Source of the DNA: Octopus sinensis | Lineage: Eukaryota | Length of the DNA: 32,317 nt | Direction of reading: 5' to 3' | NCBI RefSeq assembly: GCF_006345805.1 | Contig: NW_021832826.1 | Location: 1 to 32,317, forward strand | Shown here: positions 5,804-31,952 of the stretch, piece by piece | Layout of the letters: every line of letters begins with the position of its first letter | Numbering within the stretch: the stretch's first letter is position 1 | The notes under the pieces: model-generated | What the model was told of the DNA's origin: nothing | The model's database searches: none | What the model saw: only the letters and a program-made list of their open reading frames with translations | Made by a program: the position numbers and the translations under genes

Positions 5804-5887
5804 AGTTCTGCTGAATGTTGATTTAATATAATTTACCAAGGCTGCAGGTGACATCCACACATCATATCGTTATTGTTACTGAGGTAG
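5804..5887 (-). pseudogene. LRR C-terminal cap (LRRCT) exon with apparent 1-nt deletion
   Basis: Canonical tttcag| acceptor and |gtgagt donor, phase-2 start. Reads YLSNNNDMMCGCHLQPW* (xLxxN then CxC). Restoring one C (CTG CCA GCC) gives ...CGCHLPALVNYIKSTFSRT, open to the donor. Confidence 0.75.
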
Positions 5888-6729
5888 CTGAAATTATAAA
5901 CAAAGCCCTAAGTGAAAATACTTGAGAGGTAAATAGAAGCCGCTGTTGTATTTGACAAGAAAGAAGGATAATATAATTCCAGCAAGAATATAAAAATAAC
6001 GACATTCATGTTTCGTCCCAGAAGATGTTGATAACAGCAATAAATTGATGTGGTTTCTGGTGGAAACCGAAAATATGTTAAGTTCCTACCCTCTAATAGC
6101 TAATGTCTTGAATGATTAAAGTTCCTTTAAACAAGGAGAATATTTAGTACCACGTAAACCGATCCCTTTAAATGATGGATTAGGGGCAGTTTGTTGCCAG
6201 AAATTTGATGGGGGCAATTCGGGGCCTCAGGTATTGAGTAAAACATTTTAGACGCAATTTTCTGTCGCAAAAGCTTTGAGTGAAGATGAATCAGGAGAGA
6301 TTTGAACCTATAACAGGAAGGCATTAAAGTAAACTTAACTCACCATCCTGTGTAATAGAGAGAAGAACTGAGTAAATCACAATTTTTTAAAATATCGTTG
6401 ACGCTAAGAAAATGTATTTCACCAGGAGTGAAACATAAGGTAATCATATATATCTTATTTTTTGGTTTTAGTTTTTCTTCTTATTTAAATACGGCGATAA
6501 ATATACAAATGTTACTTTGATAGAAAATATTAAAACTTGCTCAAAAACAATAATTCATGTTATTATTTTGAAGGAATATCAATTTCGCAGTTATCAGGGA
6601 ATTAATTAAATCTACGTAGAATGCAGAGAGGGTATCTTCTTTTGATGATAGACGATTGAAACTTTTAAGACATGCGTAATATAACAAAACATAATCAGTA
6701 GACAGCTGACATATTCGAAAGTTTTGAGG

Positions 6730-7020
6730 TGTAGAGGATATAGAGGATATACGAAATATAGATGGCATGCGATATAGATAAAATACTGTATATAGCTGAT
6801 ATAGATGATATAGATGGCATGTTGGATATCGACGACATACTGGTTATAAATGACATACTGTATATAGATGACATACATAGTATAGATGACATGTGGATAT
6901 AAGTAATATAGTAGATATGGAAAAATACAAGTTGCAGATGACAGACGATATACAGACGTAGATGACATGCTTGATGATATATTTACTATAGATGATATAA
7001 ACAAATGTTGATGGCATACT
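6730..7020. repeat. Degenerate 9/18-bp periodic minisatellite (ATAGATGAC-like)
   Basis: Recurring tagatgacat / tagatggcat / tagatgatat motifs. Confidence 0.7.
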
Positions 7021-7090
7021 ATATTTTTATGCAATCTATAAATACTAGAATGTTTAATATCGTAAAACATTAAGAACTAAGTACAAAGTA

Positions 7091-7550
7091 CACCCTCACC
7101 TCGACGTAAAACCATCCGCACTTACGACTACAAAAAGTAATGCATCATTCAAGATGTTGTTCGTTGTTATCGTAAGATATATGACGAAAAAAGAAAAGAA
7201 CTATTCAAAGCTCAACATGTTCCTCGAAACACCGTCTACCTCAATCCAAGAACAAAACTGTGAAGGATGAAAATTTCTTGTCAGGTAAACTTTTTTCACA
7301 GAAACAAGTTTTTTGCCATTGTATATATGCAGAATTTCCTTTGTATTAATTTTTACATTAATTTTAGATTGTATTTTTCTTTAAAGTACAATAGAGTACA
7401 AATGCCTTTTTCACTTTATGCACAATAATTATGGATGAAATATTTGTGTTTTATAGCTTTATAATCTGTTGCAATGAAAATAGTTTTGACAAATAAATCC
7501 GACATACGACCAGATTGACTTACCGTCTGTCGTAAGTCGAGAACAGGGTG
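7091..7550. mobile_element. pogo/Tigger-like MITE relic
   Basis: Ends TA|CACCCTcacCTCGACgTA and, reverse-complemented, TA|CACCCTgttCTCGACtTACGAC. TA flanks both ends, and the CTCGACTTACGAC motif is typical of pogo-family TIRs. Confidence 0.55.
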
Positions 7551-9209
7551 TAATTATATACTATTCCCCTGAAATCTTTCGCAAATTTTTAACCTAGTTT
7601 AAAAGTAACTTTACTTTCTCACCCGTTTCATCACAGTTGGTGAGAGACACTAAATCATTCACTAAAACTCTATGTGTAACACAAAAAATATCAACATGCA
7701 TTAGTGAAATAAGATAACAGCTGCTCACACAGCTACTGGACACAACCAAAAGGATAAACAGACCTAGATTCGGAAGTGGCTTTTATCTTTCAAAGCTATT
7801 AACTGCCATATGACATATCTTCTAATTAAACATTTGATCTGAATTTCACGCGCGTAAATAATTCATGTTTTACAGTGATTTTTACAAACGATTCAAATTT
7901 GTTATAAACTCTAAACAGTTTATGAGTAATGTATATTTTTCCACATTTTTGATCACACTTGGAACATGGTACGAAGGAATGAATCCTTCACTAAAGTTGC
8001 ACCGAGCCGTCACCACAACTTAGATAAATAAGATTATAGCTGCCTACTCACACAGAGCTGCTTGACACAAACAGCATTCACCTATTGTTCTGTCCCATGA
8101 CAAATCTACAGGACTAAATCTTTCACGTAACTTTTACGCGTGACTATCACAAGATTGTAATAGACGGCCGCAACAGATAACAGCTCAAAGATCCCCTTAC
8201 CATACCACTTGACCATATTCAACCAATAAATCTGTACTTGACTGATTGTGATTTGAGACACATTCTTTCTATAAAAGTAATCGATTTCTAGGAATATTTC
8301 GCGACACAGCTCCACGTTTCTCATAAATTACACTTTTGAAAATCAACAAATGTGAAGCCAGTTAAATGTGTATACACAGAAAATTTCCAATCAGAATACG
8401 ACTGTGAGGACGTTGGTTATACGTAAGCAAAATTACGTTTGTGATGGACAGGTTGAACATTCGAACGTTATATGTAACGTTTTACTTTGTTTTACTCTCT
8501 AACGTTATATATAACTTTTTAATTCTGGCATCAATTTCTGTTTCTTCTGTTTACTTTGTCTCTTTTTTCTCGCCTTCCATCTGTCGTTTTCTCCTTCCAC
8601 TACTAACATTTTCCTCTGTTTGCTTCTTATCCTTCTTCATTCCACCATTCTTTGTCTCTCCTCCCACTACCACGTAACCGGTGATCATTCGCATCTCTCT
8701 CATCCATTTCCTTTTCCCCCTCGCCGTTGGCTCCATCAAAAGTGTACAATATAACAGTTAAAGGCACAGCATTTGTATGATGTCTTAGATGATCACTGTT
8801 GAGGAATTAGCTGCGAATTTTCCGTTTGGCGTATTTTTATTGTGTGTATGTATGAATGTATGTACGTATATATATAAATATATATAAATACTTTTTGATA
8901 GTTATATATATTTAATATTAAAAAAAAATTAATAAAAATGAAAAAAATTAATAATAAAAATATATAAAAAATAAATACATAAATAAAAAATAAATTAATT
9001 AATTAATAATTTTAATTTTCAAATTTTATATTTTATATATTATATTAATCATTTTGATTTTTATGTTTTGGTTTATGTTTTTCATTGTTTTATTTGCCTA
9101 ATAGTGGTTTTATCTCTAATTTAATTTATGAATATATATACATATATATATATATATTTCAATAGGCTTTTATAACGCCGCCTTGGCAAATGCCGGCTAT
9201 TAGGAGAAA

Positions 9210-10349
9210 GTGTCATACATATATTCAGCTCATTCTAAACCAGATACAATAATTACTTGTAATAGGAATAGTAGTTTTAATTCTAATAGTGCCAGCAACA
9301 CTATGGAAAATATAAATTCTTTTCGGACCAAGGGAGGTATGCGCCGTTCAACCCCAAATTTTCAACCCAGTAATTTTCCCCTTACTTTCACAAATAACTC
9401 TACGTACAAGTCAAAGGCCACTAAGAACTGTATCTGGTTCGTAATACCTTTCGGTAAACAAATTAAATCGAACCTTCCCTTACAGTTCCGTGAAGCCGTC
9501 GCTAGGAACTTTCCCAGAAATTCTAGATATTATTCTACTATCAATTCCCACATAGTAAGAATCGCCTTCTCTAACACTAGAAATCTTTCACAAATTATAT
9601 CTTCTCACAATACCAAGCTGATAAATAGAGGTTCTTCACCCGGGAGTTCCTACATAAATCTTACTAATTCCAAGCCATCATACAGTCATACTAATAGGAA
9701 TAGTATTAATAGTAATAGCAATGGTAGTAGCGACAGTGTTAACAATGATAACATTAATAATAGTACCAATCGTGTTAATAACAATGGTAATGTTGATAAT
9801 GATAACAATAACGGAGAAATTACTGATTGTATTACCATTAATAATACTAACAATAATACGAATAGTGGAGTTGCTAGCGCTAATAATAATAGTAACAACA
9901 ATCATAGCAATAAAAACTTCGTTTCGATCTCGGAGGACAACCCCAACAGAAATAAATTTTTGTCTAGTAATTCTAAGATCGAGAATTCTATTTACCAGTG
10001 TAGAACCTCCTCTGGTACCGATGTCTTCTTGTATATAGGAGCGTCCTCTTCCCAGTTATCCAAGATAATTTCAAACCATTATTCAAAATTCAGGGATAGT
10101 AAAAAACGACATAGTACAGGGCTAAGTAAATTAGTTTGGCGTCTTAAAGACAATAATATAGATTTCAAGTTAGATTGGTTCATACTGTCTGTATCCTTTC
10201 CTTTTGATAAGGGCAGGAGATTTTGTAACATTTGCAACTCTGAGCTCTTCCATATCCTCTTCTCTAAGGTTCCCCTTGTAAACACACTCATAGAGAAATC
10301 CTATAAATGTGTGCACTGGCAGAAACATTCTTTTTACTTTTACAAATGA
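9210..10349 (+). CDS. PLE-type GIY-YIG endonuclease-domain protein (first ATG at 9303) with an Asn-rich insert and no RT
   Basis: IWFVIPFGKQIKSNL...ISSHNTKL matches the PLE post-RT segment (IIWFNPPF...IISSHNKK type). SIYQC...LYIG, NH, LSKLVWRLK, CNIC-SE, LVN and KCVH match the PLE endonuclease with its CCHH motif. Confidence 0.8.
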   Translation: MSYIYSAHSKPDTIITCNRNSSFNSNSASNTMENINSFRTKGGMRRSTPNFQPSNFPLTFTNNSTYKSKATKNCIWFVIPFGKQIKSNLPLQFREAVARNFPRNSRYYSTINSHIVRIAFSNTRNLSQIISSHNTKLINRGSSPGSSYINLTNSKPSYSHTNRNSINSNSNGSSDSVNNDNINNSTNRVNNNGNVDNDNNNGEITDCITINNTNNNTNSGVASANNNSNNNHSNKNFVSISEDNPNRNKFLSSNSKIENSIYQCRTSSGTDVFLYIGASSSQLSKIISNHYSKFRDSKKRHSTGLSKLVWRLKDNNIDFKLDWFILSVSFPFDKGRRFCNICNSELFHILFSKVPLVNTLIEKSYKCVHWQKHSFYFYK

Positions 10350-10711: not shown

Positions 10712-10760
10712 AAATTTTGTTAACATCTTCTTCGACTCCATTCTTTCATTTATTCATATT

Positions 10761-10829
<69 letters not shown>

Positions 10830-11737: not shown

Positions 11738-11807
11738 TGTATACATATATATCTATGCATGAATATATATACATATATGTATACATATATATATACATAT
11801 ATATACT

Positions 11808-11862
<55 letters not shown>

Positions 11863-16611: not shown

Positions 16612-16683
16612 ATGTAAGAAATACTGGGAAGGAATAAGAACGCGCCATCCTCATAGTTTTGTATTTGGTTGTTGCTCAAATAT
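16612..16683 (-). CDS. LRR exon cassette, 72 nt, phase 2-2 (YLSNNQIQNYEDGAFLFLPSISY-I)
   Basis: ttctttttccag| acceptor and |gtatgt donor. 1+69+2 nt, open, fitting xLxxNxIxxxxxxxFxxLxxLxxL. Confidence 0.9.
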
Positions 16684-17605: not shown

Positions 17606-18807
17606 TAGGTCGTCAAGTATGAAAATTATAAAAAACCAATGTTTTTTTAAATACAAGGAATAGTTTTATTCTTCAATATATGCACCCATATTTTCAATAC
17701 ACTTTTGCCATTTCAGCGGTAGCCTGTGTACCCCGGAACTGTAAAAGCCTGGCAGTCTAGAGAGAATAAATTCCTGGAAGGCTTGTTTTACAGCATCATC
17801 GGAATTAATTGTTTTCCTAACAAAAAGTTAGTGAAATTCTGAAAGATGTGGTAGTCAGTGGGGGCAATATCGGGTGAGTATGGTAGATGGAGAGCTTCCA
17901 ACTCGAAACCCTGTAGTTTCGCCAAAGTTATTTTTTCGATGTGTGATCCGGCGATGTCTTGCAGTAAAATAGGATTGATCTGTTGACTAATCTAGGTTGT
18001 TTTTTGTACTTTTCTGCATCATTTGTTCCAGTTGGCTGCAGTGTACTTCGGCTGAGATTAATGAGCCAGGGGTAATGAAATCATAACGGATCACACCTGG
18101 ACCAGACCACCAAACACACACCAACAGCTTCTTTTCCGTTTTGAACTGTGTTTTGGTGGCTCGTCTTGGTCCAGTCATTGTGGTTAACCTCTACAGTTGA
18201 GGCATTTGATCGATTTCTCATCACGTTACAATCTTTTGTAAAATAATTCTTTTTTGCGATGAGAAACTAGCATAATGTAGGCATCCAAACGTTGCTATTT
18301 CTGATTTTTATTGAATACATGTCGAAGCCACTTATCCAACGTTTTCACTTTACCGATTTGAACTAGGTGAGTCAATATTGTTTGCTAACACAAAACAACA
18401 ACAATAATTCACAGGCACTTTGAGATGGATCAGACTCGACGGTTGCTTTCAGTTCGAAAATATCCAACTTTGTTTCTGGTCGACCGCATTGCTCATTTGT
18501 AATATCAAATTTACCAGAACTAGATTTTGCAAACCAATTTGATACTGTTTGCTGTGTAATAACATTAGAATGAAATTCTCCATTAATATTCTGAGCTGTC
18601 AGTGATGCTGTATTTCCAAGAGAGAACTCATATTTCAAAACTGTACAAATTTCTTCTCCTGTTTTGAAACATGATACATTTACTGAATCCGGATGCCAGC
18701 ATACTAAAAAAGTACTTTCAAATTAAAGTCTAGTTATACAATACACAGTACTGCTATTGGTCAAAAATGGTCAAAAACTTTGTGGCATTCGGTTAATGAC
18801 AAAACTA
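17606..18807 (-). mobile_element. Mariner (D,D34D) transposon relic
   Basis: N-terminal MKYEFSLGNTAS...TVSNWFAKSSSGKFD...GRP, then KLLVCVWW, ILLQDIAGSH and PYSPDIAPTDYHIF. Frameshifts and stops present; the ends are approximate. Confidence 0.9.
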
Positions 18808-20155: not shown

Positions 20156-20590
20156 ATGAAATCGTTTTGTGTCAGCCACACCCGACTGAGCAAGTTTGAG
20201 AGGGTTAAGATCATTCAGTCCTTCAGTAATGGTAGCGAAATTCATTCTCTAGATTCCATCTTCAATGCCCATTCAATAATTATCAAGACAATTGTGTGTA
20301 CGTTTGAGAATGATGGAATAGTGGAGAGGAAAGCTACATAAAGAGGTCATAACCTCAAGAAGGATCATTTCAATCTGGAGCTGAAGAGATCGATCAGAAG
20401 AGATTCAAATCAATCCATAAGGTTATTGGCATCTGGTGACAGAAGACGTGAAAACAAAATTGCATATGAAACTTGTGAGGAGTCTTGATACTCCAGGACA
20501 AAAGTTTAGAAGATTGGAGAGGGCGAAGTTCATCTGCGACAAAGAGAAACACAACCTTCTAGAGATATTTCACATAGATGAGAAGATATT
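20156..20590 (+). mobile_element. Tc1/maT(DD37D)-like transposase N-terminal fragment
   Basis: LSKFERVKIIQ..., IRRDSNQSIRLLA, QKFRRLERAK and IFHIDEKIF (first catalytic Asp, xDEKxF). Truncated at the tandem-duplication boundary. Confidence 0.55.
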
Positions 20591-21161
20591 CAGCCAAGAT
20601 ATGCACAGAAACAGACGCGACAGCTGAGTTCTGGCTTCAGCTCACGAGAAAGCCAAAGTGTCATTTTAGGCGCAAAAACCTGACTAAGTGATACTTTTCA
20701 ACTGAATGATCTCTGATGGTAAGAGAATGTTCCTTGTCACACATGTGTAGTGAGACAAATGTTTCGCATGGATGAGTTTGCGAAAAGGTTTTAGGATAAG
20801 GACACTTGGCCTCATTCATCACCTGGCATGATCTGATCATTAAATAAGCTCGTGAGTAGCCCCACACTTACCTGGACGTGGGAATAGGACATTGATGAGA
20901 ATTTCCATAAGTAATCTTGTGGTAAGGCATGAAAAAGGTTGATAAAGTCTTTGGCAAACAAGGAGTAACTCATGATGCTTAGACAACCAGGTTTTGTGGC
21001 CAGAATTCTTACTCAATCTTTCAAATATCACTTTAAAACCTTCCGTTTGGACTTTATTCCAATGTTTCATGAGCTCCCAATCCTGAGCTATGTTAAAACA
21101 TAGAATTTCATCTTCGCCAATTCATTCATGATTATTCATGAGAGCTTGGAGAGGAACTCAC

Positions 21162-21350
21162 ATTTCGTCTTGCTCAAAATAGGGTCCATTTGTGTTAGAA
21201 AAGCCGCTGATAGTTCTGATACCTTTAAATAATACTGAGACACAACGTTTCGAATTTGTATCTAAAATTTGGACACTTTTTTCTGATATACTCGGTATCT
21301 GTACATCCATACACAAAAACTTATGACGATTAAAAGATAAGCTTAGAAAA
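21162..21350 (-). CDS. Candidate 189-nt phase 2-2 exon (copy 1), product unclear
   Basis: Long pyrimidine tract ending ttctag|, donor AAT|gtgagt. Open as FLSLSFNRHKFLCMDVQIPSISEKSVQILDTNSKRCVSVLFKGIRTISGFSNTNGPYFEQDE. Only weakly LRR-like. Confidence 0.35.
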
Positions 21351-21677
21351 CTAGAATAAAGAAGTAAACAACGAGAAAAAATGATGGAATAAAGTTGAAT
21401 AATGGGATTTTTTTATATTAGGTAAACGGATGTTTAAACAAGAACATGATTACCTATGCATAAGAAGTAAGTAAAAAAGAAGCTCATTCATCCACACACC
21501 TACACTTTCACAAACACGCATTCACACATACACTCAGAGAAAACTATGGAGAGAGTGAACGGGTGTTAGATAGATACACTCTTGAAAGAGAGAGAGAAAA
21601 AAACAAAGTTGGAGAAGATATTAACAATGTAGATATATGGGGAAATAGATGGTACGAACAAAAGCGACACAACTCAC

Positions 21678-21749
21678 AGTTCTTCTAAATTCGGAAGGTT
21701 TTCGAAGGTACCGCGTTGAATATACGTGATATTATTGTCATTCAAATTC
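21678..21749 (-). CDS. LRR exon cassette, 72 nt, phase 2-2 (NLNDNNITYIQRGTFENLPNLEE-L)
   Basis: ttttatgttacag| acceptor and |gtgagt donor. Matches the typical LRR consensus. Confidence 0.92.
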
Positions 21750-21844
21750 CTGTAACATAAAACGGAGTTCATAACAAACATATAGAAAAGATTAGTGACA
21801 AAATGTTAAATATTATGGCGAAAAAAATTAGATATAATTAAGAA

Positions 21845-23010
21845 ATTTAAATGGAGATGATGATGAGAGGGACGGCGAGAAGGAAGAATATGAAGAGGAG
21901 GGGAGGAAGGAAGAGAACAGAAGAAGACGGAAAATAACAGAAAAAGAAGAATAGAAGAGGAAAAAGAAGGAAGTAGAGAGATGTAGTAGAGGAAGAACAA
22001 AAAGAAAGGAGAGAATGAAGAGTTGAAGGAGGAGAGTAGAAAAATAAAACTAGACGAGACGAAGGAGTAGCAGAAGTAAAAGATGAAGAAGAAGAAGAAT
22101 AAAAGAAAAGGAAGAAGAAGATGACAAAGAAGAACGAGAGAAAGAAAAAGAAGAGCAGAAGGAAAACAACAAAATAAATTGCGAAAGAAAAAAGAGGCGA
22201 AAGAAGACGATGACAACAAAAGGAAAGGGAAGAAGAAGAAGCATCAGGAGCAGCAGCAGCAGAAGAAGAAGGAGGAGGAAGGGGAGGAGGAGAAGAAGAA
22301 GTAGAAGAAGAAGAAGAACAACAACAACAACAAAAGTGAAGAAGGACAGGGGCTTGTGAATGAGAATGAAGAGTAGGAAAGAACAAGCTGAAGAAGATTA
22401 AGAAAGAGAAGAAAGACAGAGGTGGAGGAGGAGAAAAGAGAAGAAGAGAAGCAAGATAGGTATATAGAGTAGAAAAAGGACATGGACAACAAATACAACA
22501 ACAACAAAGAACAAGTCATGCAGAAGAAGAAGAAGAAAGGAAATGAAAAATACAAGAGTAACAGGATGAAAATTTAGAAAAACAAAAAGGAAAAATATAG
22601 AGAAGAAGAAGAAGAAGAAGAAGAAGAAGAAGAAGAAGAAGAAGAAGAAGAAGATGAAGAAGAACAAGAACAACAACAAAAACAACAACAACAGCTACAA
22701 CAACGGCAATGAGTAGAAGAGGCAAGAAATGTAAAAGCCGGATAAAAAGAACAATGAGGAAGAGGAAGCGGGGAGAGATAAATTGATAGATGCAGAGGAG
22801 AGTGTGAAGAAAATGAAATTGAAGAATAAGAGAAAGGAAGGATATGAAGAATCAGAAGGAAAAATGTAGACGAGTAAAAAGACAAGGAAGAAGAAGAAGA
22901 ACAACAACAACGACAACAACTACAAGTAGAAGTATAAGTAGAGGTAGGAGGAGAAGAAGAAGCAAAGAAGAAGAAGAAAATAATAAGATGAGGAGGAGCG
23001 AGAAGAAGGA
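21845..23010 (+). repeat. Purine-rich (GAA/GGA/CAA)n low-complexity tract; paralogue at 24320-25160
   Basis: Read directly, including pure (GAA)n at ~22601-22655. Confidence 0.95.
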
Positions 23011-23632
23011 TATTCACCCTCGATATGCGCACAAACTGACGCGACAGCTGAGTTCTCGCTTCAGCTCACGAGAAAGTAATAATGTCATTTTAGGGGCAAA
23101 AACCTGACTGATACTTTTCAAATGCATGATCTCTGATGGTAAGATGATGTTCCTTGTGACACAAGTGTAGTGAGACAAGTGTTTCCCATGGATGAGTTTG
23201 CGAAAAGGTTTTAGGATAAGGACACTTGGCCTCATTCATCCCCTGGTTTGAGCACTTTAGACGTCAGCATCTGGCATGAACTGATCATAAAAATGTTTGT
23301 GAGTAGCCCCACACCTATCTGAAAGCCCTCGAAACATCCATTCTTAGGTCGTGTGAATAGGACATTGATGAGAACTTCCATAAGAAATTTTGTGGTAAGG
23401 CAGGAAAAGGGTTGATAAAGTCTTTGTCAAACAAGGAGTAACTCATGATGCCTAAAATCCAAGGGTTTGGCCAGACTTCTTACTCAATCTTTCAAATATC
23501 ACTTTAAAACCTTCCGTTTGGACTTTATTCCAGTATTTCATGAGCTCCCAATCCTGAGCTATGTTAAAACATAGAATTTCATCTTCGCCAATTCATTCAT
23601 GATTATTCATGAGAGCTTGGAGAGGAACTCAC

Positions 23633-23821
23633 ATTTCGTCTTGCTCAAAATATGGCCCATTTGTGTAAGAAAAGCCGCTGATACTTCTGTTACCTTTAAG
23701 TAATACTGAGACACAACGTTTCGAATTTGTATCTAAAATTTGGACACTTTTTTCTGATATACTCGGTATCTGTACATCCATACACAAAAACATATGAAGA
23801 TTAAAAGATAAACTTAGAAAA
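23633..23821 (-). CDS. Candidate 189-nt phase 2-2 exon (copy 2), product unclear
   Basis: Same splice signals as copy 1. Open as FLSLSFNLHMFLCMDVQIPSISEKSVQILDTNSKRCVSVLLKGNRSISGFSYTNGPYFEQDE. Confidence 0.35.
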
Positions 23822-24148
23822 CTAGAATAAAAAAGTAAACACGAGAAAAAATGATGGAATATAGTTGAATAATGAGAATTTGAATATTAGGTAAACGGAT
23901 GTTTAGAAACAAGAACACGATTACCTATGCATAAGAAGTAAGTAAAAAAGAAGCTCATTCATCCACACACCTACACTTTCACAAACACGCATTCACACAT
24001 ACACTCAGAGAAAACTATGGAGAGAGTGAACGGGTGTTAGATAGATACACTCTAGAAAGAGAGAGAGAAAAAAACAAAGTTGGAGAAGATATTAACAATG
24101 TAGATATATGGGGAAATAGATGGTACGAACAAAAGCGACACAACTCAC

Positions 24149-24220
24149 AGTTCTTCTAAATTCAGAAGGTTTTCGAAGGTACCGCGTTGAATATACGTGA
24201 TATTATTGTCATTCAAATTC
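24149..24220 (-). CDS. LRR exon cassette, 72 nt, phase 2-2 (NLNDNNITYIQRGTFENLLNLEE-L)
   Basis: Duplicate of 21678-21749 with a single change (CCG/CTG, P/L). Splice sites intact. Confidence 0.92.
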
Positions 24221-26622
24221 CTGTAACATAAAACGGAGTTCATAACAAACATATAAAAGATTAGTGACAAAATGTTAAATATTATGGCGAAAAAAATTAG
24301 ATATAATTAAGAATTTAAATGGAGATGATGATGAGAGGGACGGCGAGAAGGAAGAATATGAAGAGGAGGGGAGGAAGGAAGAGAACAGAAGAAGACGGAA
24401 AATAACAGAAAAAGAAGGAATAGAAGAGGAAAAAGAAGGAAAGTAGAGGAGATGTAGTAGAGGAAGAACAAAAAGAAAGGAGAGAATGAAGAGTTGAAGG
24501 AGGAGGAGTAGAAAAAAAACTAGACGAGACGAAGGAGTAGCAGAAGTAAAAGATGAAGAAGAAAAGCAGCAACAAGAAGAAGATGACAAAGAAGAAGGAG
24601 AGAAAGAAAAAGAAGAGCAGAAGGAAAACAAATAAATTGCGAAAGGAAAAAGAGGCGAAAGAAGACGATGACAACAAAAGGAAAGGGAATAAGAAGCAAG
24701 CAGCAGCAGAAGCAGCAGAAGAAGAAGAAGGAGGAGGAGGGGGAGGAGGGGGTGGAGAAAAAGAAGATGAAGAAGAACAAGAACAACAACAAAAACAACA
24801 ACAACAACAACAGCTACAACAACGGCAATGAGTAGAAGAGGCAAGAAAAGTAAAAGCCGGATAAAAAGAACAATGAGGAAGTGGAAGCGGGGAGAGATAA
24901 ATTGATAGATGCAGAGGAGAGTGTGAAGAAAATGAAATTGAAGAATAAGAGAAAGGAAGGATATGAAGAATCAGAAGGAAAAATGTAGACGAGTAAAAAG
25001 ACAAGGAAAAGAGAACAACAACAACGACAACAACTACAAGTAGAAGTATAAGTAGAGGTAGGAGGAGAAGAAGAAGCAAAGAAGAAGAAGAAAGAATAAG
25101 ATGAGGAGGAGCGAGAAGAAGGATGAAGAAGGAGGATGGGGACGATGAAGAAGAAGAAGCAGAAATAGAAGTCTAGAATGTTAACCAATACACAAACAGA
25201 CACATACACACACAACCAAAGCAGGAGAAAAAAAGAATTATGAAGGGGAAGTGGTTAGACATAAATTAACATACGCAGAAGGACATAGGGTAGGAAATGA
25301 AAGAAAGAATAAGAGGAAGAATATGACGAATAAGAAGAAAAAAGAAGTCAAAGACGTTAATCAGTGTTTAGGGAGGAATAAATACCGTACATGATATAGA
25401 AACCGAATTACAGATACATTTTGCTACACTCGCATACACGCATCCATGCACCAACTGATACAAACACGCACAGAGACACCATCGCACACACACACACACA
25501 CGGACATAACTATTTGCACCACATTTTCTCTTCAATTGTCTCAAACTTTTATATCAGAAATCTCACGAATTTCTCCCCGCAACATTCGCAGTGTTTCACA
25601 AACAATAACACAGTTCGGATAGAGAAAGATTGTAAACATACACAGAAATACACGCGCATGCACTCAATGGGTTTCGTCTTGTATCGTGCATTAACATATC
25701 CCATATTTTTAGAAATGGACCCACACTCACACTCTCACATTTACAAAAAATAAAACTGATCTTTGGAAGTATAGACAAGGGAGGTTAAAATGAAGGATAG
25801 GCACATATTACAAATTTAGAAAGATAACGTAATGAAATATTAAAGAAGATTTAAATATAAGAGGTTTCAGAGGAATAGAGAATTCAGCGGATGATAGAGA
25901 AAGAGAAAGTGATATGAAGAAATCATGAAAGAGAATTTTTACATAAAGGAGAAGAAGAAGGAGAAGAAGAAGAAGAAGAAGGAGGAGGAGGAGGAGGAGG
26001 AGGAGGAAGTGGAGGATAGAGGAAATGTAAATAATGTAAATAGTGAGATGGTAGTAGTTGTGATATTGATAGTAATGAATATGTTAATAAGGCAAGATGA
26101 AAATAAATGGTGGTACTATCCATAACGAAGAGATTATGATGATGATGACGAGAGTGATGTTGTTAATGCTGATTGTTATGATAATGATTGAGGATTATCA
26201 TTTCAATGGTGAATATGAATATGATATTGAGGATGATGACGATGATGGTAATGTATTTGTCGTCCAGGATCAGAATGGATTTCAAGATATTGTATCTCTA
26301 TCGTGGTGCTATTTGGTAATAAATGATCTCGATGATGAAGATGGCGACGATGAACTTGACGATGTTTATGAGTGAGAAATGTAACAATGAAGATGAGAAT
26401 AATGTGTCTGATGAGGACAGAGAGGAAGACGTCCATAGTTATCACGGTGGCAATGGAGGTGAATTAAATAGATTTAAAGGAATAAGAGACTTCAGCTGAT
26501 GATGGAGAAAGATAAAATGTTATGAAGAACGTACGGAAGGAAATTTTACACACACGAGAAATAAAGTAGAAGGAGGCGGAAGAGGAGAAGGTGATGAAGA
26601 AGAAGAAGAAAGAAGGAGCATT

Positions 26623-26763
26623 AGAAGAAGAAGAAGAAGAAGAAGAAGAAGAAGAAGAAGAAGAAGAAGAAGAAGAAGAAGAAGAAGAAGAAAAAGAAGA
26701 AGAAGAAGAAAGAAGAAGAAGAAGAAGAAGAAGAAGAAGAAGAAGAAGAAGAAGAAGAAAAGA
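26623..26763 (+). repeat. (GAA)n microsatellite, ~140 bp
   Basis: Read directly, with few interruptions. Confidence 0.97.
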
Positions 26764-26770
26764 AGTAGAT

Positions 26771-26842
26771 ATATATCTTAAACTGGACAAATTTCGGAAG
26801 GTGTCTCCCTTGATTTCCTTAATATCATTAGAAGACAAATAC
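26771..26842 (-). pseudogene. Dead LRR cassette (YLSSNDIKEIKGDTFRNLSSLRY-I)
   Basis: 72 nt and open, but the acceptor position reads AA and the donor position reads AT. The upstream intron is homologous to those of the other cassettes. Confidence 0.85.
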
Positions 26843-26919
26843 TTGGAACACAAAATGGAGTTAAGAAGCAATTTTATGAGACATTTAGGGAAAAAGTTTG
26901 GTTAAACAATTAGATTTTT

Positions 26920-27340
26920 TGCGCACCGTGCCTGAAAGGTGCAGCTCTATCTAAAATACTCCATGTCACGTTGAAAGGTCGGTCTTCTTTTAATTCCCAG
27001 GCATACTTTGCCAAGCTGGTCTTCATCCTACTTTCGGGGTTTCCGAAGGAATTTTTATGCGAATAAAATCGGGTTTTGAAAGAATTTTCAGAAGCCCCGG
27101 TACAAGTTCTATATTAGCGTGAGCCTTCTATCTGCACCTTGGCTCTATACACGATTCCTTTCTCCAGACATTTTCCTTCCAACGGACAGGAGGTTCCATC
27201 ATTTCAATTATAATTTTTAAAAAGAGAATAGGCACTATGATTATTAGCAGTTATCCTACTGTTGTGTTGGTTAAAAAAAGAGAGGCGAAGTGCACGGTGC
27301 ACATAAAAGACCCATCAAATCTGATTTATGCCTGCTGGAA
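26920..27340 (-). mobile_element. Penelope-like element fragment (canonical linker plus GIY-YIG)
   Basis: SCPLEGKCLEKGIVYRAKV...*...TGASENSFKTRFYSHKNSF...TSLAKYAWELKE...VTWSILDRAAPF. One in-frame stop; 3' truncated. Confidence 0.88.
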
Positions 27341-28802
27341 AAATATTTTATTTCATTCCAGGACAATAACTCTTTAAATCAAAGAAGCGAACTCTTGAAT
27401 TCCTGCAGACACGCAACTGAATTTAAAATGTCGGTTAGCGATATACCATATGGATAGTGTATATTTTATTGGTTCTTGGACTAGTTTGATTTATGACTAC
27501 ATGATTTATTTCGCATCGCAAAGTTATTGTATATATTTCGAGATATTTCTCAAGAAAAACCTTCGATTGTTATACGTAAATATTATTTTCTTGTTTAAGT
27601 TTCTACATTTATTTTATTTCATTGTATTTTTATAAACCCATTTTAATCGCTTAATTTATAGATAATTCGATTTAGAGTGTTCTAATTTGCATATCTTTTA
27701 TTCGAATTTTATTATTATGCACTCAGCAATTTTTTTAAAATGTTGTTTAAATATATACGTCAGGACGTAGAGATGCTTTTATGTGGATATTTGTATTGTT
27801 GGCATGCATCTATGTATATGTGTAGGTAAGCGTGTATGTTTATAATTGTGCACATACATACATGGATGTATATGTATGCACGTGTTCATTTAGATTTGTG
27901 CAGATGTATATTTACGCACTTTCTTCCATATATTTATAAATGTGATCTGATATGTGTATTTATGCTAATATACACTTTTGTATAAACATGTATACGTAAT
28001 TTTATTTTGTGTGCGTTCGTTGCACATATTCAGCCACCTATTTTTCTTTCTTCCTTCTTTTCCTTTCCTTACGGAAGGTATTTTTCTTTCCCCATTCGTT
28101 ATTTGTATACAGTCCTTTAACTTCTCACTTCTCTCCCTCCTCCCACTCACCACTTTCTCTCGCTAACCGTTATATCTAAGATCCTTTATTTTCTTTTTCT
28201 TTCCCCCTCTCTGCGTTTTAAAATTCACTTCTCATCAAGATTGTCTGTCATAACTTCTATATGTATACACCAAGTGATTTTTGCATGCTAGTATGATTGC
28301 GTACATATGTATACATGTGTATATGTATATGTGTATATATATTTACGTCTTATATATGTCTGTATATGCATGTAGTCTGTGTGCATCCATCTGTGTATTT
28401 TGATGTATATATGTATATTAATGGTTAAATATCGCTTTATATTGTTGTAAAATATTTCTCTAATGTAGTGTGAAAATTTTAATGTATTAATTGTATTAAT
28501 TGTATTATATTTCGTATATAATCATTTGCAATATGTATTTTGAATCAGCTCTTCAATTTAAGGTTTTCTTTGATTTTTATAATAGGATGAATTTATATTG
28601 AATTCATTTTTTATTTTGTTTAGTTTGTTTATTGCATGCATAAGACCGTTGATTGAAAGGACCAATGAAGCAAATCCATTTTTAAAAGTGTATCATTTAA
28701 CTAGATTTTATCATATGGTTATTTCTGTTCTATTTTAAGAAAACGGTCCGAGGAACGGGAAGGTGAAACTCCGAGTAACAGCTTTTGGCATATTTCTGCT
28801 GC

Positions 28803-28866
<64 letters not shown>

Positions 28867-28969
28867 CAGGCATAACTTGCACTACACTTTTCCCTTCAAT
28901 TGTCATACACTGATATATCCGAATTCTCAAGAATTGCCCTCTACAACATTCGCAGTGATTCACAAGCAA

Positions 28970-29008
28970 CCATCTTCGATTTCCATGATATCATTAGAAT
29001 ACAAGTAC
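28970..29008 (-). pseudogene. Truncated LRR cassette (YLYSNDIMEIEDG...)
   Basis: The acceptor ttttttgtcccag| is intact. After 39 nt the sequence jumps to downstream-intron sequence homologous to ~25540-25615, so a deletion removed the 3' half and the donor. Confidence 0.75.
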
Positions 29009-29151
29009 CTGGGACAAAAAATGAGTTAAGAAGCACTTTTATGAGACATTTATGACAGGCTTTTGGTTTAAAATTTACATGAAGGAAGAGAAGAACAGCA
29101 AAGAAGAAGAAAATGAAGATGAAGAAGAAGAAAATAAAAAAGAAAGATAAG

Positions 29152-29273
29152 TGTTGTGTGGACGCCTCCAGACGATGAAGTGGATTAGCCCAATACGTAG
29201 ATAGAGAGGGAGACGTCTAGACGTCAGAGAGGAGAAGGGTTGAGTAGAGGTCATCCGAACGTGCGATATAATA
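29152..29273 (+). repeat. 5' LTR
   Basis: TGTTGTG...ATAATA; 13 differences from the 3' LTR by manual count. Confidence 0.9.
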
Positions 29274-29339
29274 GTGGCGACGAGGTTTCGAATAGTAATG
29301 AAAAGGAAGAGTTACTGAAAGCAGTCGTAAATCAACGAG

Positions 29340-30930
29340 AGTAGCAGCAGCATCTACGGTTGTTAACAGAATTGTTACTGCAGTCGAGAAATACGACCGA
29401 ATCATTTTCAGCAGATGGTTTTGCAAATTCCATCGAAGAATTTCACTACAATCCGGATGAAGGAACTACTTTTGCTGCATATTACAGACGATAGGAAGAC
29501 ATGTTCCGAGAGGAATGCAAGGGATGGCCTTGTGAAAGGAAGGTAAGGCTCCTTTTCCGAAAGCTTGCGACTCCGGAACACGAAAGATTTTGTAACTTTA
29601 TTTTGCCGAGAAAGCCCGCGGGGTTGTGTTTTGATGAAGCCATAATTATTTTGACTAATACTTTTAGTGAGTAAAAACATTCGATGAGAATGTTTAAATT
29701 TAAAGAAAAACGAGTCCGATGATTTTTTTAACATGTTCCGGTATGCTTAATAAGGCTTGCGAAAGGTTTAAGCAGGAAGAATTAACGCCAAATATGTTCA
29801 AGTGCCTAATATTCGTTAAAGGGCTAGTGGCAACGGAAGACGCGGAAATTAGAAAAAGAATATTATCAAAGTTGAATCAAGATGTGAAACTCACTTTGCA
29901 GAAAGGGGCTGAGGAAGGCCAACAAATAATAAACCTTCGAGATGATACAAGAAAGTATGGTGCTATGGTTTCGGAGATCGACATTTGAAGAAAGATTGCT
30001 CCTTTAAAGATAAAACCTGTTTTAAGTGTGGTAAAATTGGACATATACTGACGAAATGCCGGTCAAAGAAAATGGTAAAACAGAAGAAAGTCTACTCAAC
30101 AAAAGTAAATTATATCAGACAAAATCGAAAATTTGTGTTGGTAGAAATAAATGGGTTTCAGACCAAAATGCAATTAGATTCCGGTTCGGACGTATCGATA
30201 ATAAATACAGCAACATGGAGTAAGATAGGCAGACCGTTGTATAAAACAAAAACTACTAGAATAGCCTACGGTGTGTCAGCGGAACGAGTTCAATTCTTGG
30301 GCGAAATTTCACCAGAAATAAAACTTAAAAACAGGACGCGGAAATGTAAACTAATGGTATCTAAGAATATATTGAATCTGTTTGGCACATATTTAGTACA
30401 AGGATTCGACCTGTAGGATCTATCACTGAATACATTATGTAACAAGGTGAATGCGTCACAGACCGTGTCAGAGAAAGCATGGGAACAAATGAAATTAAAA
30501 TTGAAAAAGATGTACCCTGTTATTTTTCCGAAAGAGCTCGGTATGTGTAAAAAATTAAAGTAAAGTTTGAGTTGAAAGAAGATGCGGTGCCGGTGTTCAA
30601 ACCGAAAAGAAATGTACCTTTCGCGGCGTTAAACCAGGCTGAAAACAAATACAAAGATTGGAAGACATGGAAGTTATTGAAAAAGTAGATTACTGTGAGT
30701 GGGCGGCTCCTACAGTATATATAAAAAAGAAGAACAACGAGGTAAGAGTATGTGCAGACTGGTCTTAATGATTGTTTAAAAAATTACACTTATCCGCTTC
30801 CAAACCCAGAAGACATATTTGCTAAGTGCAGTGGCGGGAAAATGTTTTCCAAGCTGGATTTGTCAGAGGCCTAATTCCAATTACTGTCAGATGAAGAATG
30901 TGCTAAAGTATTAACAATCAATACTCGCAA
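29340..30930 (+). pseudogene. gag-pol remnant: gag, CCHC knuckle, protease and start of RT
   Basis: FHYNPDEGTTFAAYYRR*EDMF, CFKCGKIGHILTKC (CX2CX4HX4C), QLDSGSDVSII, EWAAPTV..KKNNEVRVCAD, YPLPNPEDIF, FSKLDLSEA. The rest of RT, RNase H and integrase are absent. Confidence 0.9.
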
Positions 30931-31351
30931 ATATGACAACATTTTTGCAGGTGTATACAATAACACCGAATCCAAATACAGAGTTGGGTAGGTCACCAGC
31001 AGATATGCTGCTTTCCAGAAAAATTCGTTCTATTTTTGACAAATGGTTGCCGGGCAGGAAACAGAAATAGAAAATTCGGGAAGAAAAACGAAATTGTTTA
31101 ACATAGGTGACAAAGAGAGGCGAGAAGAACCAATGGATTTATGGTATGATTTGTTCCAGGTCCCAGGACTACAAACAAAAGTGTTCGAGGTCCCAGAACC
31201 ACAAGCAAAAGCAGAACCGACACGTAGGTCGAACAGGAAGAGAAAACCTACAGAAATGATGGAAATTAACGCTAAGAGAAAAAGATATGCCAGTTTCTCA
31301 CCGAGGAAATAAAATTGATAAATTTGGGTTTAAAAACTCAAAAGAGGCAGG

Positions 31352-31473
31352 TGTTGTGCGGACACCTCCAGACGATGAAGTAGACAAGCCCAATACGTAG
31401 ATAGAGAGGAAGAACTCTAGACGTCAGAGAAGTGAAGGGTTGAGTAGAGGTCATCCGAACGTGCAACATAACA
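31352..31473 (+). repeat. 3' LTR
   Basis: TGTTGTG...ATAACA. Confidence 0.9.
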
Positions 31474-31878
31474 AGAAGAAAAAGAGAAACGATAGAGATG
31501 TCAATAATGTAGATGATACCCAATTACACATATATTTTGATACAATCGCAAATCCGCATCTATACAGAAACAAACACACACGCACACAACCACACACACA
31601 CCGGCCCCTTCCCCCAAGCCATACATATAATATACGTAGTTTACTCAAAGCAAGTGTGTGAACATACACAGTTATATACACATGCATGCACTAAATGGTT
31701 TCGCCTTGCATCATGAACCCACACATCCCGTATTTCAGAAATGGACCCACACGCACGCTCTCAAATTGATGAACAATAAAACCTTTCTTTGGATGGACGG
31801 GTAAGGGATGGGCACATAATACAGATTAGGAAAGATATCGTCAATGAAATACTACAGAAGGAAACAGATTCAACTTAT

Positions 31879-31952
31879 AGATATGTGAACCTACACAAAT
31901 CTCGGAGGGTGTCATATTTGATTTCCTTGATGTCATTAGAATCCCCAAGTGT
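31879..31952 (-). pseudogene. Dead LRR cassette (HL..DSNDIKEIKYDTLRDLCRFTY-L)
   Basis: The acceptor tgttccag| is intact. The exon is 74 nt (a 2-nt insertion causes a frameshift) and the donor is mutated to ATAAGT. Confidence 0.8.

What the first reader, a model, noticed from the sequence alone, without database searches (positions are those of the whole stretch)
5804..31952. Hidden minus-strand array of 72-nt LRR exon cassettes undergoing birth and death
Seen: six paralogous 72-nt-type phase-2 LRR exons (three intact, three dead) plus an LRRCT exon, almost all invisible to the ORF track. The intact exons splice in frame: NLNDNNITYIQRGTFENLLNLEEL-NLNDNNITYIQRGTFENLPNLEEL-YLSNNQIQNYEDGAFLFLPSISYI-YLSNNNDMMCGC. 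Known: one-LRR-per-72-nt phase-2 exon architecture occurs in Slit/peroxidasin/LGR-type genes, and symmetric exons can be added or skipped without a frameshift. Inference: this is a lineage-specific LRR locus that varies its repeat number by cassette duplication and loss. It may allow skipping or mutually exclusive use, loosely analogous to Dscam or VLR-style diversification, in a possible immune or recognition protein.
Basis: partly seen in the sequence, partly recalled or inferred. Interest (0 to 1): 0.8.

Follow-up and report, generated by a model that had tools for sequence, protein, structure and literature searches.

The report
Octopus adhesion-receptor LRR exons, duplicated and decaying
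The hidden exons are real: they are the leucine-rich-repeat part of an octopus adhesion G-protein-coupled receptor gene that gains and loses one-repeat exons by ordinary germline duplication and decay, not by a Dscam- or VLR-like diversification system, and this copy looks disabled.

Summary
Three canonical 72-nt phase-2 LRR exons lie on the minus strand (24149-24220, 21678-21749, 16612-16683). There are also three dead copies, one unit whose exon is deleted, and an LRRCT exon.

The window is collinear with Octopus vulgaris OX597842.1. The exons belong to an octopod-expanded family of adhesion GPCRs with the architecture LRRNT, 4 to 14 LRRs, LRRCT, a Ly6/uPAR-like module, GAIN/GPS and 7TM. This family is probably the published "group 3" expansion.

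- **Duplication:** the two NITYI exons come from a 2.4-kb tandem duplication with a microhomology junction. The O. vulgaris reference has only one copy, so cassette number does differ between genomes.
- **LRRCT exon:** It carries a 1-bp deletion relative to O. vulgaris and O. sinensis, which gives a premature stop.
- **Dead copies:** they are relics of former upstream LRRs.
- **Diversification idea:** nothing supports mutually exclusive splicing or VLR-style assembly. The two live duplicates differ by one residue.
- **Exon evolution:** the exons diverge twice as fast as the introns, mostly through nonsynonymous changes.

Verdict: an ordinary birth-and-death exon array in a known, fast-evolving receptor family. 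Interest is modest.

The parts
31877..31952 (-). Relic LRR exon E (..LGDSNDIKEIKYDTLRDLCRFTYL). It has a 2-nt insertion, and the donor GT is mutated to AT.
   Evidence: the same relic is in O. vulgaris L001 at 1766-1828
29140..31471 (+). Deleted LTR-retrotransposon fragment lying between relics D and E. It has 132-nt direct repeats at 29140-29271 and 31340-31471, and a zinc knuckle plus aspartyl protease at 29946-30413.
28970..29008 (-). Relic LRR exon D (YLYSNDIMEIEDG..). Its 3' half was deleted, and a stop follows.
26771..26842 (-). Relic LRR exon C2 (YLSSNDIKEIKGDTFRNLSSLRYI). The frame is open, but the acceptor is displaced by 1 nt and there is no donor; (TTC)n abuts it.
   Evidence: identical peptide in L001 at 7036-7107
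25514..26188 (-). Unit C1. It is homologous to the E unit on both sides, but the exon is replaced by (CCT/CTT)n.
23004..25124 (-). Tandem-duplication copy B (2.1 kb), which carries LRR exon B.
24149..24220 (-). Intact 72-nt phase-2 LRR exon B (NLNDNNITYIQRGTFENLLNLEEL).
20581..23011 (-). Tandem-duplication copy A (2.4 kb), which carries LRR exon A. The A|B junction is at 23004-23011, inside the microhomology GAGAAGA..GAT.
21678..21749 (-). Intact 72-nt phase-2 LRR exon A (NLNDNNITYIQRGTFENLPNLEEL). It is the ortholog of the single O. vulgaris exon at L001 10034-10105.
21213..21991 (.). Homogenised tract around exon A; its partner in copy B is about 23684-24460. A and B differ by about 0.4% here and share their differences from the reference, while the flanks differ by 6-9%.
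16612..16683 (-). Intact 72-nt phase-2 LRR exon F (YLSNNQIQNYEDGAFLFLPSISY-I). It is the last LRR before the cap and the ortholog of L001 15040-15111.
5719..5887 (-). LRRCT exon: 169 nt here and 170 nt in orthologs, entering in phase 2 and leaving in phase 1, with donor GTTAGT. It encodes a four-Cys cap, ..NNNDMMCGCHL(P)ALVNYIKSTFSRTVSVRGECQTDPGNNQSKIIPIMEYSQCQ.
5833..5845 (-). Site of the 1-bp deletion (one C of CTGCCAGCC, between 5845 and 5844) and the resulting in-frame TAA stop at 5833-5835. The stop is 114 nt before the exon's 3' end.
   Evidence: (alignment with O. vulgaris and O. sinensis)

Best explanation
The window is the LRR-coding 5' part of one member of an octopod-expanded adhesion-GPCR family, from Octopus vulgaris or a very close relative.

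**Family architecture.** Signal peptide, LRRNT, a variable number of 24-residue LRRs, a four-Cys LRRCT, a Cys-rich Ly6/uPAR-like module, a hormone-receptor-like/GAIN region, GPS and a 7TM domain.

**How repeat number changes.** Each LRR is one 72-nt exon flanked by phase-2 introns. A germline tandem duplication or deletion of an exon + intron block of about 2 kb therefore adds or removes exactly one repeat without shifting the frame. Repeat number thus evolves between paralogs and between genomes. This is an evolutionary process, not a somatic or splicing-based diversification system.

**State of this copy.**
- Three or four upstream LRR cassettes are decayed pseudo-exons. They are shared with the reference, so they are old.
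- One cassette (NITYI) has been duplicated. The duplication has a microhomology junction, is absent from the reference, and has since been homogenised over about 0.8 kb, probably by gene conversion.
- The LRRCT exon has a 1-bp deletion that creates a stop 114 nt before the exon's end.

**Consequence (inferred).** This haplotype probably cannot make the full LRR-LRRCT-LU receptor. Transcripts that include the LRRCT exon would be substrates for nonsense-mediated decay. An isoform that splices the last LRR exon straight to the GAIN-region exon, as in the O. vulgaris gene model, would stay in frame.

**Shown versus inferred.** Shown: the exon anatomy, the orthology, the copy-number difference, the deletion and the family architecture. 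Inferred: gene conversion, the functional consequence, and membership of the published 'group 3'.
For: **Exon anatomy and LRR identity:**

**Organism:** the best hits of a TE fragment are Octopus bimaculoides and O. sinensis.

**Homologs found with a query that included the mended LRRCT:**
- P0043, an O. bimaculoides 'LRRCT domain-containing protein', at 67% identity over 96% of the query.
- P0045, P0046 and P0048, which consist of LRRCT plus a Cys-rich tail. P0046 is named ly6/PLAUR domain-containing protein 1-like.
- P0047, the O. vulgaris 'adhesion GPCR G6-like' model, which contains the orthologs of exons A and F spliced together.

**Orthology and synteny:**
- L001 (O. vulgaris OX597842.1) is collinear with the whole window.
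- It carries, in order, relics E and C2, one NITYI exon, exon F, an intact LRRCT, LU exons 1 and 2, GAIN-region exons, and then a GPS + 7tm_2 gene.
- The same order from the LRRCT exon through the GAIN-region exons is seen in O. sinensis L002 and, with its LRR exons, in O. bimaculoides L004; a GPS/7tm_2 hit was seen only in L001, L002's downstream gene having only a weak GAIN_ADGRA3 hit and L004's no Pfam hit.

**Family architecture:**
- A profile search of 1.84 billion proteins finds only 36 relatives.
- The long ones have LRR_8 + GPS + 7tm_2, and one has a Death domain.
- They are named adhesion GPCR A3, G6 or GPR126-like and come from Octopus and Argonauta, with distant hits in Nucella and Mizuhopecten. 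One 1155-aa member sits on 4-kb Logan contigs, which implies it is an mRNA.
- The LRRNT-to-LRRCT distance varies from about 4 to about 14 repeats at a 24-residue period.

**Published context:** Ritschard et al. 2019 (PMC6408891) describe an octopus-specific adhesion-GPCR expansion. [quoted passage not shown]

**Duplication:** one copy in the reference, the junction microhomology, and the mosaic A/B/reference pattern.

**Deletion:**
Against: - No expression data could be examined, so use of any junction in this genome is unproven.
- No signal-peptide or LRRNT exon lies in the window, and only 1.4 kb more was available upstream. The 5' end of the gene is therefore unknown.
- The O. vulgaris and O. 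sinensis gene models are partial and disagree. One starts in the intron before the NITYI exon and skips LRRCT and LU. The other starts inside the LRRCT exon.
- In a paralog, the exon after LU appears to end in phase 0, whereas the GAIN-region exon is entered in phase 2. The exact exon chain joining LU to GAIN was not reconstructed at this locus.
- The 1-bp deletion sits in a CC run and could be an assembly error.
- The Ly6/uPAR assignment is weak. It rests on the Cys pattern (..CCxGxLCN), the NCBI name, and PDB profile hits at E = 0.2-0.4 to ACVR1 and LYPD1. Pfam finds nothing, and the AlphaFold model failed with pLDDT 30.
- Membership of Ritschard's 'group 3' is inferred from matching domain content and was not checked against their gene list.
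Confidence: 0.72

Rival explanations
1. The gene is functional and intact in this genome. The missing C in the LRRCT exon is an assembly or sequencing error. LRRNT and signal-peptide exons lie beyond 32317 and splice over the relics. The two-NITYI allele simply encodes a receptor with one more LRR than the reference allele.
For: - All other exons and splice sites are intact.
- The deletion is in a CC dinucleotide.
- The structural residues (LRR scaffold, four LRRCT cysteines) are conserved, while the variable positions change faster than introns: pN 0.087, pS 0.055, exons 8.1% against background 3.8%, p = 4e-4. This looks like a protein under selection rather than a long-dead relic.
- The O. 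vulgaris and O. sinensis orthologs have an open LRRCT.
Against: - Three or four upstream cassettes are dead in both the window and the reference.
- The reference annotation found no upstream exon; its model starts inside the intron.
- An opposite-strand gene model starts about 1.4 kb beyond the window end in L001.
- No protein in 5.8 billion contains two NITYI repeats in tandem.
Confidence: 0.3
2. The cassettes are used combinatorially, by skipping, by mutually exclusive splicing as in Dscam, or as donors for somatic assembly as in VLR, to diversify a recognition protein within one animal.
For: - The 72-nt phase 2-2 exons are symmetric, so any subset can be skipped in frame.
- The O. vulgaris model does skip the LRRCT and LU exons in frame.
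- The family evolves fast.
Against: - Only two live alternative cassettes exist, and they differ by one residue.
- Their flanking introns are about 99% identical, so they carry no distinct selector sequences. They are 2.4 kb apart, so there is no steric exclusion. Both use GT-AG, and including both stays in frame.
- The relics have frameshifts, truncations and lost splice sites. They are few, and they are conserved as relics in the reference.
- The copy-number difference is germline, between genomes.
Confidence: 0.04
3. The second NITYI cassette is an assembly artefact, that is, two haplotypes placed in tandem. Under this reading there is no real copy-number difference.
For: - The region is unusually divergent from the reference (2-7%), so divergent haplotypes may exist.
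- The A and B flanks differ by a similar amount, 6-9%.
Against: - The join is seamless, with no Ns, and lies in only about 8-10 bp of microhomology. That is too short for an assembler overlap and is typical of a real tandem duplication.
- B lacks a 300-bp segment that is present in A and in the reference.
- Neither copy is reference-like throughout.
- A and B share about 4% differences from the reference across the central tract.
Confidence: 0.1

Closest known systems
Octopus-specific adhesion GPCR expansion ('group 3' of Ritschard et al. 2019, PMC6408891). Members are annotated as adhesion GPCR A3, G6 or GPR126-like in O. bimaculoides, O. vulgaris and O. sinensis.
   Same: - The window's exons are orthologous or paralogous to the LRR and LRRCT exons of these genes.
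- The family has N-terminal LRRs, GPS and 7tm_2, with one member carrying a Death domain.
- It forms tandem clusters and evolves fast, matching the published description.
   Different: - The paper worked at protein level. It did not describe the one-LRR-per-exon architecture, the variation in LRR number, or the LRRCT + Cys-rich (LU-like) module.
- This particular copy has dead 5' cassettes and a frameshifted LRRCT.
- Identity with 'group 3' is inferred and was not checked gene by gene.
Vertebrate ADGRA2/ADGRA3 (GPR124/GPR125): LRR, LRRCT, Ig, HormR, GAIN, 7TM.
   Same: - The overall ectodomain logic is shared: an LRR block capped by LRRCT, followed by a small disulfide-rich domain, then a hormone-receptor-like region, GAIN and 7TM.
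- NCBI names one paralog ADGRA3.
- The gene downstream in O. sinensis has a weak GAIN_ADGRA3 hit.
   Different: - The module after LRRCT is not an Ig domain. It is a 10-Cys domain ending in CCxGxLCN, which is Ly6/uPAR or three-finger-like, and the evidence for that is weak.
- The LRR number is variable and reaches about 14.
- Orthology to ADGRA was not tested.
Slit, LGR and glycoprotein-hormone-receptor genes, which encode one LRR per exon of about 72 nt with phase-2 introns (from established knowledge, not re-derived here).
   Same: The exons are exactly 72 nt with phase 2 on both sides, and the Slit-type four-Cys LRRCT aligns (CxCHL..L..Y......C..P....K.I..I.....C).
   Different: - The gene is not a Slit or an LGR. 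It has no EGF or laminin G domains and no rhodopsin-type 7TM.
- One paralog is merely mis-named 'slit homolog 1-like'.
- The LRR blocks here are single, not four tandem LRR domains.
Lamprey VLR loci and the Drosophila Dscam1 exon clusters.
   Same: The only shared feature is that similar LRR-sized or exon-sized cassettes lie in tandem near or within a receptor gene.
   Different: - There is no large, diverse cassette library.
- The relics are degenerate.
- The live duplicates are nearly identical.
- The variation is germline.

Membership tests
Extracellular 'typical' LRR domain with cysteine caps | Tandem 24-residue repeats of the form LxxLxLxxNxIxxIxxxxFxxL | tested here: met
   Pfam LRR_8 at E = 6.6e-32 on the spliced exons. 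PDB hits to ALS, LRRC15, LRIG1 and LGR4/5.
Extracellular 'typical' LRR domain with cysteine caps | C-terminal four-Cys cap (LRRCT) | tested here: met
   The cap is contiguous at 5719-5887 once the 1-bp deletion is allowed for. It aligns to VLR and Slit LRRCTs and to intact orthologs. The Pfam LRRCT model itself gave no hit.
Extracellular 'typical' LRR domain with cysteine caps | N-terminal cap (LRRNT) and signal peptide | tested here: not met
   No CxxCxC..C ORF on the minus strand of the window apart from low-complexity sequence. Full-length paralogs do have one. It may lie beyond 32317 or be lost.
One-LRR-per-72-nt phase-2 exon architecture (Slit/LGR type) | Each repeat is a separate 72-nt exon with phase-2 introns on both sides | tested here: met
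   Three exons with AG/GT boundaries, 72 nt each, and split codons that complete to L, L and I. The orthologous exons are joined in the O. vulgaris model P0047.
Octopod LRR-LRRCT-LU adhesion GPCR family | LRRCT followed by the conserved Cys-rich module (NYSLFQRNLQCQTC...CCxGxLCN) | not testable with these tools
   The LU exons lie just outside the window. In the collinear O. vulgaris locus, the first LU exon is about 0.4 kb beyond window position 1.
Octopod LRR-LRRCT-LU adhesion GPCR family | GAIN/GPS and 7tm_2 in the same gene, downstream | tested here: inconclusive
   - Same-strand GAIN-region exons follow in L001, L002 and L004; a GPS + 7tm_2 gene was seen only in L001.
- Full-length paralogs carry all domains in one protein.
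- At this locus, however, the annotations are split and the exon chain was not closed.
VLR-type somatic assembly system | An incomplete germline gene flanked by many diverse, intact LRR cassettes used as donors | tested here: not met
   Only 3-4 flanking cassettes exist. All are degenerate and are conserved as relics in the reference. The live LRRs are ordinary spliced exons.
Dscam-type mutually exclusive exon cluster | Several alternative exons of equal length but different sequence, with a mechanism that enforces the choice of one | tested here: not met
   There are two exons that differ by one codon. Their flanks are about 99% identical, they are spaced 2.4 kb apart, and double inclusion stays in frame. 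RNA docking and selector pairing were not searched for.
Unprocessed pseudogene or null allele | A frame-disrupting mutation relative to intact orthologs | tested here: met
   A 1-bp deletion gives a TAA stop at 5833-5835, whereas O. vulgaris and O. sinensis have open frames. Read-level confirmation was not possible.

The most novel reading that the evidence does not exclude
The live part of this receptor ectodomain gene might be held as ancient, strongly diverged haplotypes by balancing or diversifying selection.

- These haplotypes would differ in LRR number (one or two NITYI repeats), in many exposed residues, and even in null or functional state.
- Divergence from the O. vulgaris reference is 2-7% across 1-25.1 kb, which contains all live exons. 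It drops to 0.2-1.7% exactly at the edge of the duplication, over the part that contains only relics.
- Exons diverge twice as fast as introns.

That pattern would resemble allorecognition or R-gene-like polymorphism at an octopus sensory or adhesion receptor.
Probability: 0.1. Interest if true: 0.6.

Novelty: new member of a known kind. Interest (0 to 1): 0.33.

Why it matters
- It gives a concrete DNA-level picture of how the octopus-specific adhesion-GPCR family changes its ligand-binding LRR domain. Single 72-nt exons are added by microhomology-bounded tandem duplication, homogenised by conversion, and lost through splice-site decay, deletion, microsatellite expansion and TE insertion.
- It documents a one-versus-two cassette difference between two closely related genomes.
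- It flags an unrecorded domain arrangement for this family: LRRCT followed by a Ly6/uPAR-like module ahead of GAIN.
- It shows that current octopus annotations split these genes into fragments.
- It removes the more exciting reading. This is not a somatic or splicing-based diversity generator.

Tried and rejected
- **Spliced-peptide search.** The 89-aa spliced peptide gave no hit in the 5.8-billion protein search. Adding relic C2 and the mended LRRCT found the family.
- **Exact-ORF look-ups.** Two window ORFs found nothing.
- **RNA genes.** Rfam and tRNA scans were empty.
- **LRRCT splicing models.** Both were rejected, because orthologs read straight through this stretch as one exon and the Cys spacing only fits the contiguous reading.
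- **Missing exons.** I looked in the window for an LRRNT exon, for a relic of the 'NENKIEN' LRR present in P0043, and for the LU exons. None was found.
- **Pfam.** It does not detect LRRCT or LU in the window product or in the homologs.
- **Structure prediction.** AlphaFold on the LRRCT-LU alignment gave pLDDT 30, so no fold search was run.
- **Divergence step.** I tried to explain the step at 25.1 kb as unequal crossing-over between a reference-like haplotype and a divergent one. This was rejected because copy B is not reference-like.
- **Direction of the copy-number change.** Whether the duplication is a gain in the window lineage or a loss in the reference could not be decided. Informative sites are split (A=B 74, A=ref 79, B=ref 52), and no outgroup sequence covers this part.

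Full report
**What is in the sequence**

The window is AT-rich (35% GC) animal DNA. It is full of (TA)n, (CA)n and (GAA)n microsatellites and transposon debris.

I scanned both strands for AG + 66-78 nt + GT/GC with an open phase-2 frame and an LRR pattern. The scan returned 18 candidates; three score as LRR exons and are genuine: 24149-24220 (B), 21678-21749 (A) and 16612-16683 (F). Each is exactly 72 nt and has good splice signals. The split codons complete to Leu, Leu and Ile. The spliced product is a strong LRR_8 match and resembles extracellular LRR proteins in the PDB.

Three further copies are dead:
- C2 (26771-26842) has a displaced acceptor and no donor.
- D (28970-29008) has lost its 3' half.
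- E (31877-31952) has a 2-nt insertion, and its donor is mutated.

About 60 nt of intron upstream of the acceptor is conserved among A, B, C2, D and E, so these are DNA duplicates of exon + intron blocks. A seventh unit, C1 (25514-26188), matches the E unit on both sides but has a (CCT/CTT)n tract where the exon should be. A deleted LTR element sits between D and E.

Downstream of '..NNNDMMCGCHLQPW*', the next reading frame continues directly with 'ALVNYIKSTFSRTVSVRGECQTDPGNNQSKIIPIMEYSQCQ'. Joined together, the two pieces form a four-Cys Slit/VLR-type LRRCT with correct spacing, and PDB alignments run across the join.

Homologs read '..MMCGCHLPALVNY..' in a single frame. A DNA alignment with the orthologous exons of O. 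vulgaris and O. sinensis shows that the window lacks one C of CTGCCAGCC, between 5845 and 5844.

The exon therefore spans 5887..5719. It is 169 nt here and 170 nt in the orthologs, and it ends with the donor GTTAGT in phase 1. In this sequence it contains a TAA stop at 5833-5835, 114 nt before its 3' end. This is either a real null mutation or an assembly indel in a CC run, and I cannot tell which.

**What gene this is**

A transposon fragment in an intron has its best hits in Octopus bimaculoides and O. sinensis. A protein search with relic C2, the spliced exons and the mended LRRCT found an Octopus family:
- P0043 (O. bimaculoides) has four LRRs plus LRRCT and is 67% identical.
- P0044, P0045, P0046 and P0048 have LRRCT followed by a conserved 10-Cys module ending in CCxGxLCN. 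NCBI names P0046 'ly6/PLAUR domain-containing protein 1-like'.
- P0047 (O. vulgaris, 'adhesion GPCR G6-like') begins with MFVMNSVLCYR. That peptide is the translation of the intron just upstream of exons A and B. The model then continues with the orthologs of exon A and exon F, followed by non-LRR sequence.

The genomic locus of P0047 is L001 (O. vulgaris OX597842.1). It is collinear with the entire window in reverse orientation. In order, it contains:
- relic E, relic C2, one NITYI exon and exon F;
- an intact LRRCT exon;
- two LU exons, the first only about 0.4 kb beyond the window's start;
- GAIN-region exons;
- a gene model with GPS and 7tm_2.

The same order, from the LRRCT exon through the GAIN-region exons, is seen at an O. 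sinensis locus (L002) and at a compact O. bimaculoides paralog (L004), which also shows its LRR exons. A GPS/7tm_2 hit was seen only in L001.

A profile of LRRCT + LU, searched against 1.84 billion representative proteins, finds only 36 relatives. The long ones carry LRR_8, GPS and 7tm_2 in one polypeptide, and one also has a Death domain. They are annotated as adhesion GPCR A3, G6 or GPR126-like in Octopus and Argonauta, with weak relatives in a gastropod and a scallop. One 1155-aa member lies on 4-kb Logan contigs and is therefore probably an mRNA.

This matches the octopus-specific adhesion-GPCR expansion described by Ritschard et al. 2019. That expansion has LRRs in 5 of 22 members and a Death domain in one. 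[quoted passage not shown] That the two are the same family is my inference.

The Ly6/uPAR assignment of the post-LRRCT module is only weakly supported. The support is the Cys pattern, the NCBI name, and top PDB profile hits to ACVR1 and LYPD1 at E = 0.2-0.4. Against it, Pfam is silent and the AlphaFold model failed.

**Does cassette number vary?**

Yes, at two levels.

*Between paralogs.* Models that contain both LRRNT and LRRCT have about 4 to 14 LRRs at a strict 24-residue period. Several contain runs of near-identical repeats.

*Between genomes.* Window copies A (20581-23011) and B (23004-25124) both map onto a single 2.7-kb stretch of the O. vulgaris reference, which has one NITYI exon.
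- The A|B junction joins the end of the unit to its start within about 8-10 bp of microhomology (GAGAAGA..GAT), with no gap. This argues for a real tandem duplication and against a haplotype mis-join.
- The copies are mosaic. Over about 0.8 kb around the exon, and in a second tract, they are about 99.5% identical and share about 4% differences from the reference. Elsewhere they differ by 6-9%, and each carries private changes.
- The simplest reading is a duplication about as old as the split between this haplotype and the reference, followed by gene conversion.
- Whether the window gained a copy or the reference lost one cannot be decided without an outgroup.

**What the dead copies are**

Relics C2, D and E read 'SNDIKEIK..TF..L..L'. 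This is the motif of the upstream LRRs in intact paralogs, for example 'GGNNIKEIKTGTFQHLTRL' in P0069 and 'MKEIKTELFQYLSSLKTL' at the start of P0043. They lie in the part of the window that is 98-99.8% identical to the reference and are dead there too. They are remnants of a formerly longer LRR domain. They are neither failed new births nor a donor library.

No LRRNT or signal-peptide exon is in the window, and the reference annotation found none either. The gene may have lost its 5' end, or its first exons may lie further upstream.

**Rate of evolution**

Across the 309 aligned coding nucleotides of exons A, F and LRRCT, the window differs from O. vulgaris at 25 sites (8.1%). Across 22.9 kb of surrounding non-coding DNA the figure is 3.8% (binomial p = 4e-4).

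About 22 of the 25 changes are nonsynonymous, giving pN 0.087 against pS 0.055. The LRRCT shows the same pattern in all three species pairs. The scaffold leucines, the asparagine and all four cysteines are kept.

The numbers are small. Still, the pattern fits positive or diversifying selection, or conversion from paralogs, better than simple neutral decay. It also agrees with the published omega > 1 on some branches of the family.

**Why the Dscam/VLR reading fails**

- The only two live alternatives differ by one residue.
- Their introns are near-identical, so they carry no distinct selector sequences.
- They are 2.4 kb apart and use the same GT-AG sites.
- Including both keeps the frame, so nothing enforces a choice.
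- The relics cannot be spliced in frame.
- The variation that I can see is germline.

In-frame exon skipping is possible in principle. The O. vulgaris model does join exon F (phase 2) directly to the phase-2 GAIN-region exon, skipping LRRCT and LU. That is ordinary alternative splicing at most, and I could not test it.

**Verdict**

The evolutionary half of the interpretation (a lineage-restricted LRR locus that changes repeat number by cassette duplication and loss) is supported and extended. The mechanistic half (combinatorial or exclusive cassette use, and an immune role) is not supported.

The locus is a member of a known, published receptor expansion, evolving in a known way. This particular copy has dead 5' cassettes and a frameshifted cap. 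Interest is modest. The unexplained step in divergence at the edge of the duplication and the fast exon evolution are the only features that could make it more than ordinary.

Noticed in passing
window 1-25100 versus 25100-32317: Mismatch rate to the collinear O. vulgaris reference is 2-7% per kb up to about 25.1 kb. It then drops to 0.2-1.7% for the rest of the window. The step coincides with the right-hand edge of tandem copy B. All live exons lie in the divergent part and all relics lie in the near-identical part. For scale, O. sinensis against O. vulgaris is about 3-9% in the same region.
   Followed up: partly
window 21750-21782 and 24221-24253 (minus strand): The O. vulgaris gene model P0047 starts at an ATG inside the intron immediately upstream of the NITYI exon (MFVMNSVLCYR). 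The same in-frame ATG is present before both window copies. This is either an internal start site or an annotation artefact caused by missing upstream exons.
   Followed up: partly
window 12174-13241 (-), 17669-18722 (-), 29140-31471 (+): The introns hold a PIF1/Helitron helicase fragment split by a stop, a mariner-type transposase remnant (HTH_48), and a deleted LTR element with a zinc knuckle and protease between 132-nt direct repeats.
   Followed up: partly
window 9204-10346 (+) and 26913-27113 (-): The longest open frame in the window is 381 aa, asparagine-rich, and has no Pfam family. Its C-terminal motif (..Y.G....F..R...H....L.K..W.LK....F...W.IL...C..C..E) is shared with a short ORF at 26913-27113. 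It is probably an uncharacterised transposon protein. The region is less diverged from the reference (about 2%) than its surroundings.
   Followed up: no
window 1-1303: The window has a 244-nt tandem repeat (3.2 copies, 95-867) and inverted repeats at 1-138 and 853-990. Window 803-1303 matches the O. vulgaris locus in the opposite orientation to the rest of the window. This suggests a small inversion flanked by inverted repeats, in the intron just before the LU exons.
   Followed up: no
window 1449-1848: A near-perfect hairpin with 178-nt arms (96% complementary) and a 44-nt loop. It looks like a MITE. A related sequence is at 9018-9157.
   Followed up: no
L001 31342-34441, L002 14150-17541, L004 2805-4923 (outside the window): The family has a conserved two-exon, 10-Cys module after LRRCT (NYSLFQRNLQCQTC ... 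CCxGxLCN), ahead of the GAIN region. A Ly6/uPAR-like domain in an adhesion GPCR ectodomain may not have been described before. The evidence for the fold is weak.
   Followed up: partly
L001, L002, L003, L004 gene models: NCBI models at these loci are fragments of what full-length paralogs show to be one receptor. Their names range from 'ly6/PLAUR domain-containing protein 1-like' and 'slit homolog 1-like' to 'adhesion GPCR G6-like'.
   Followed up: partly
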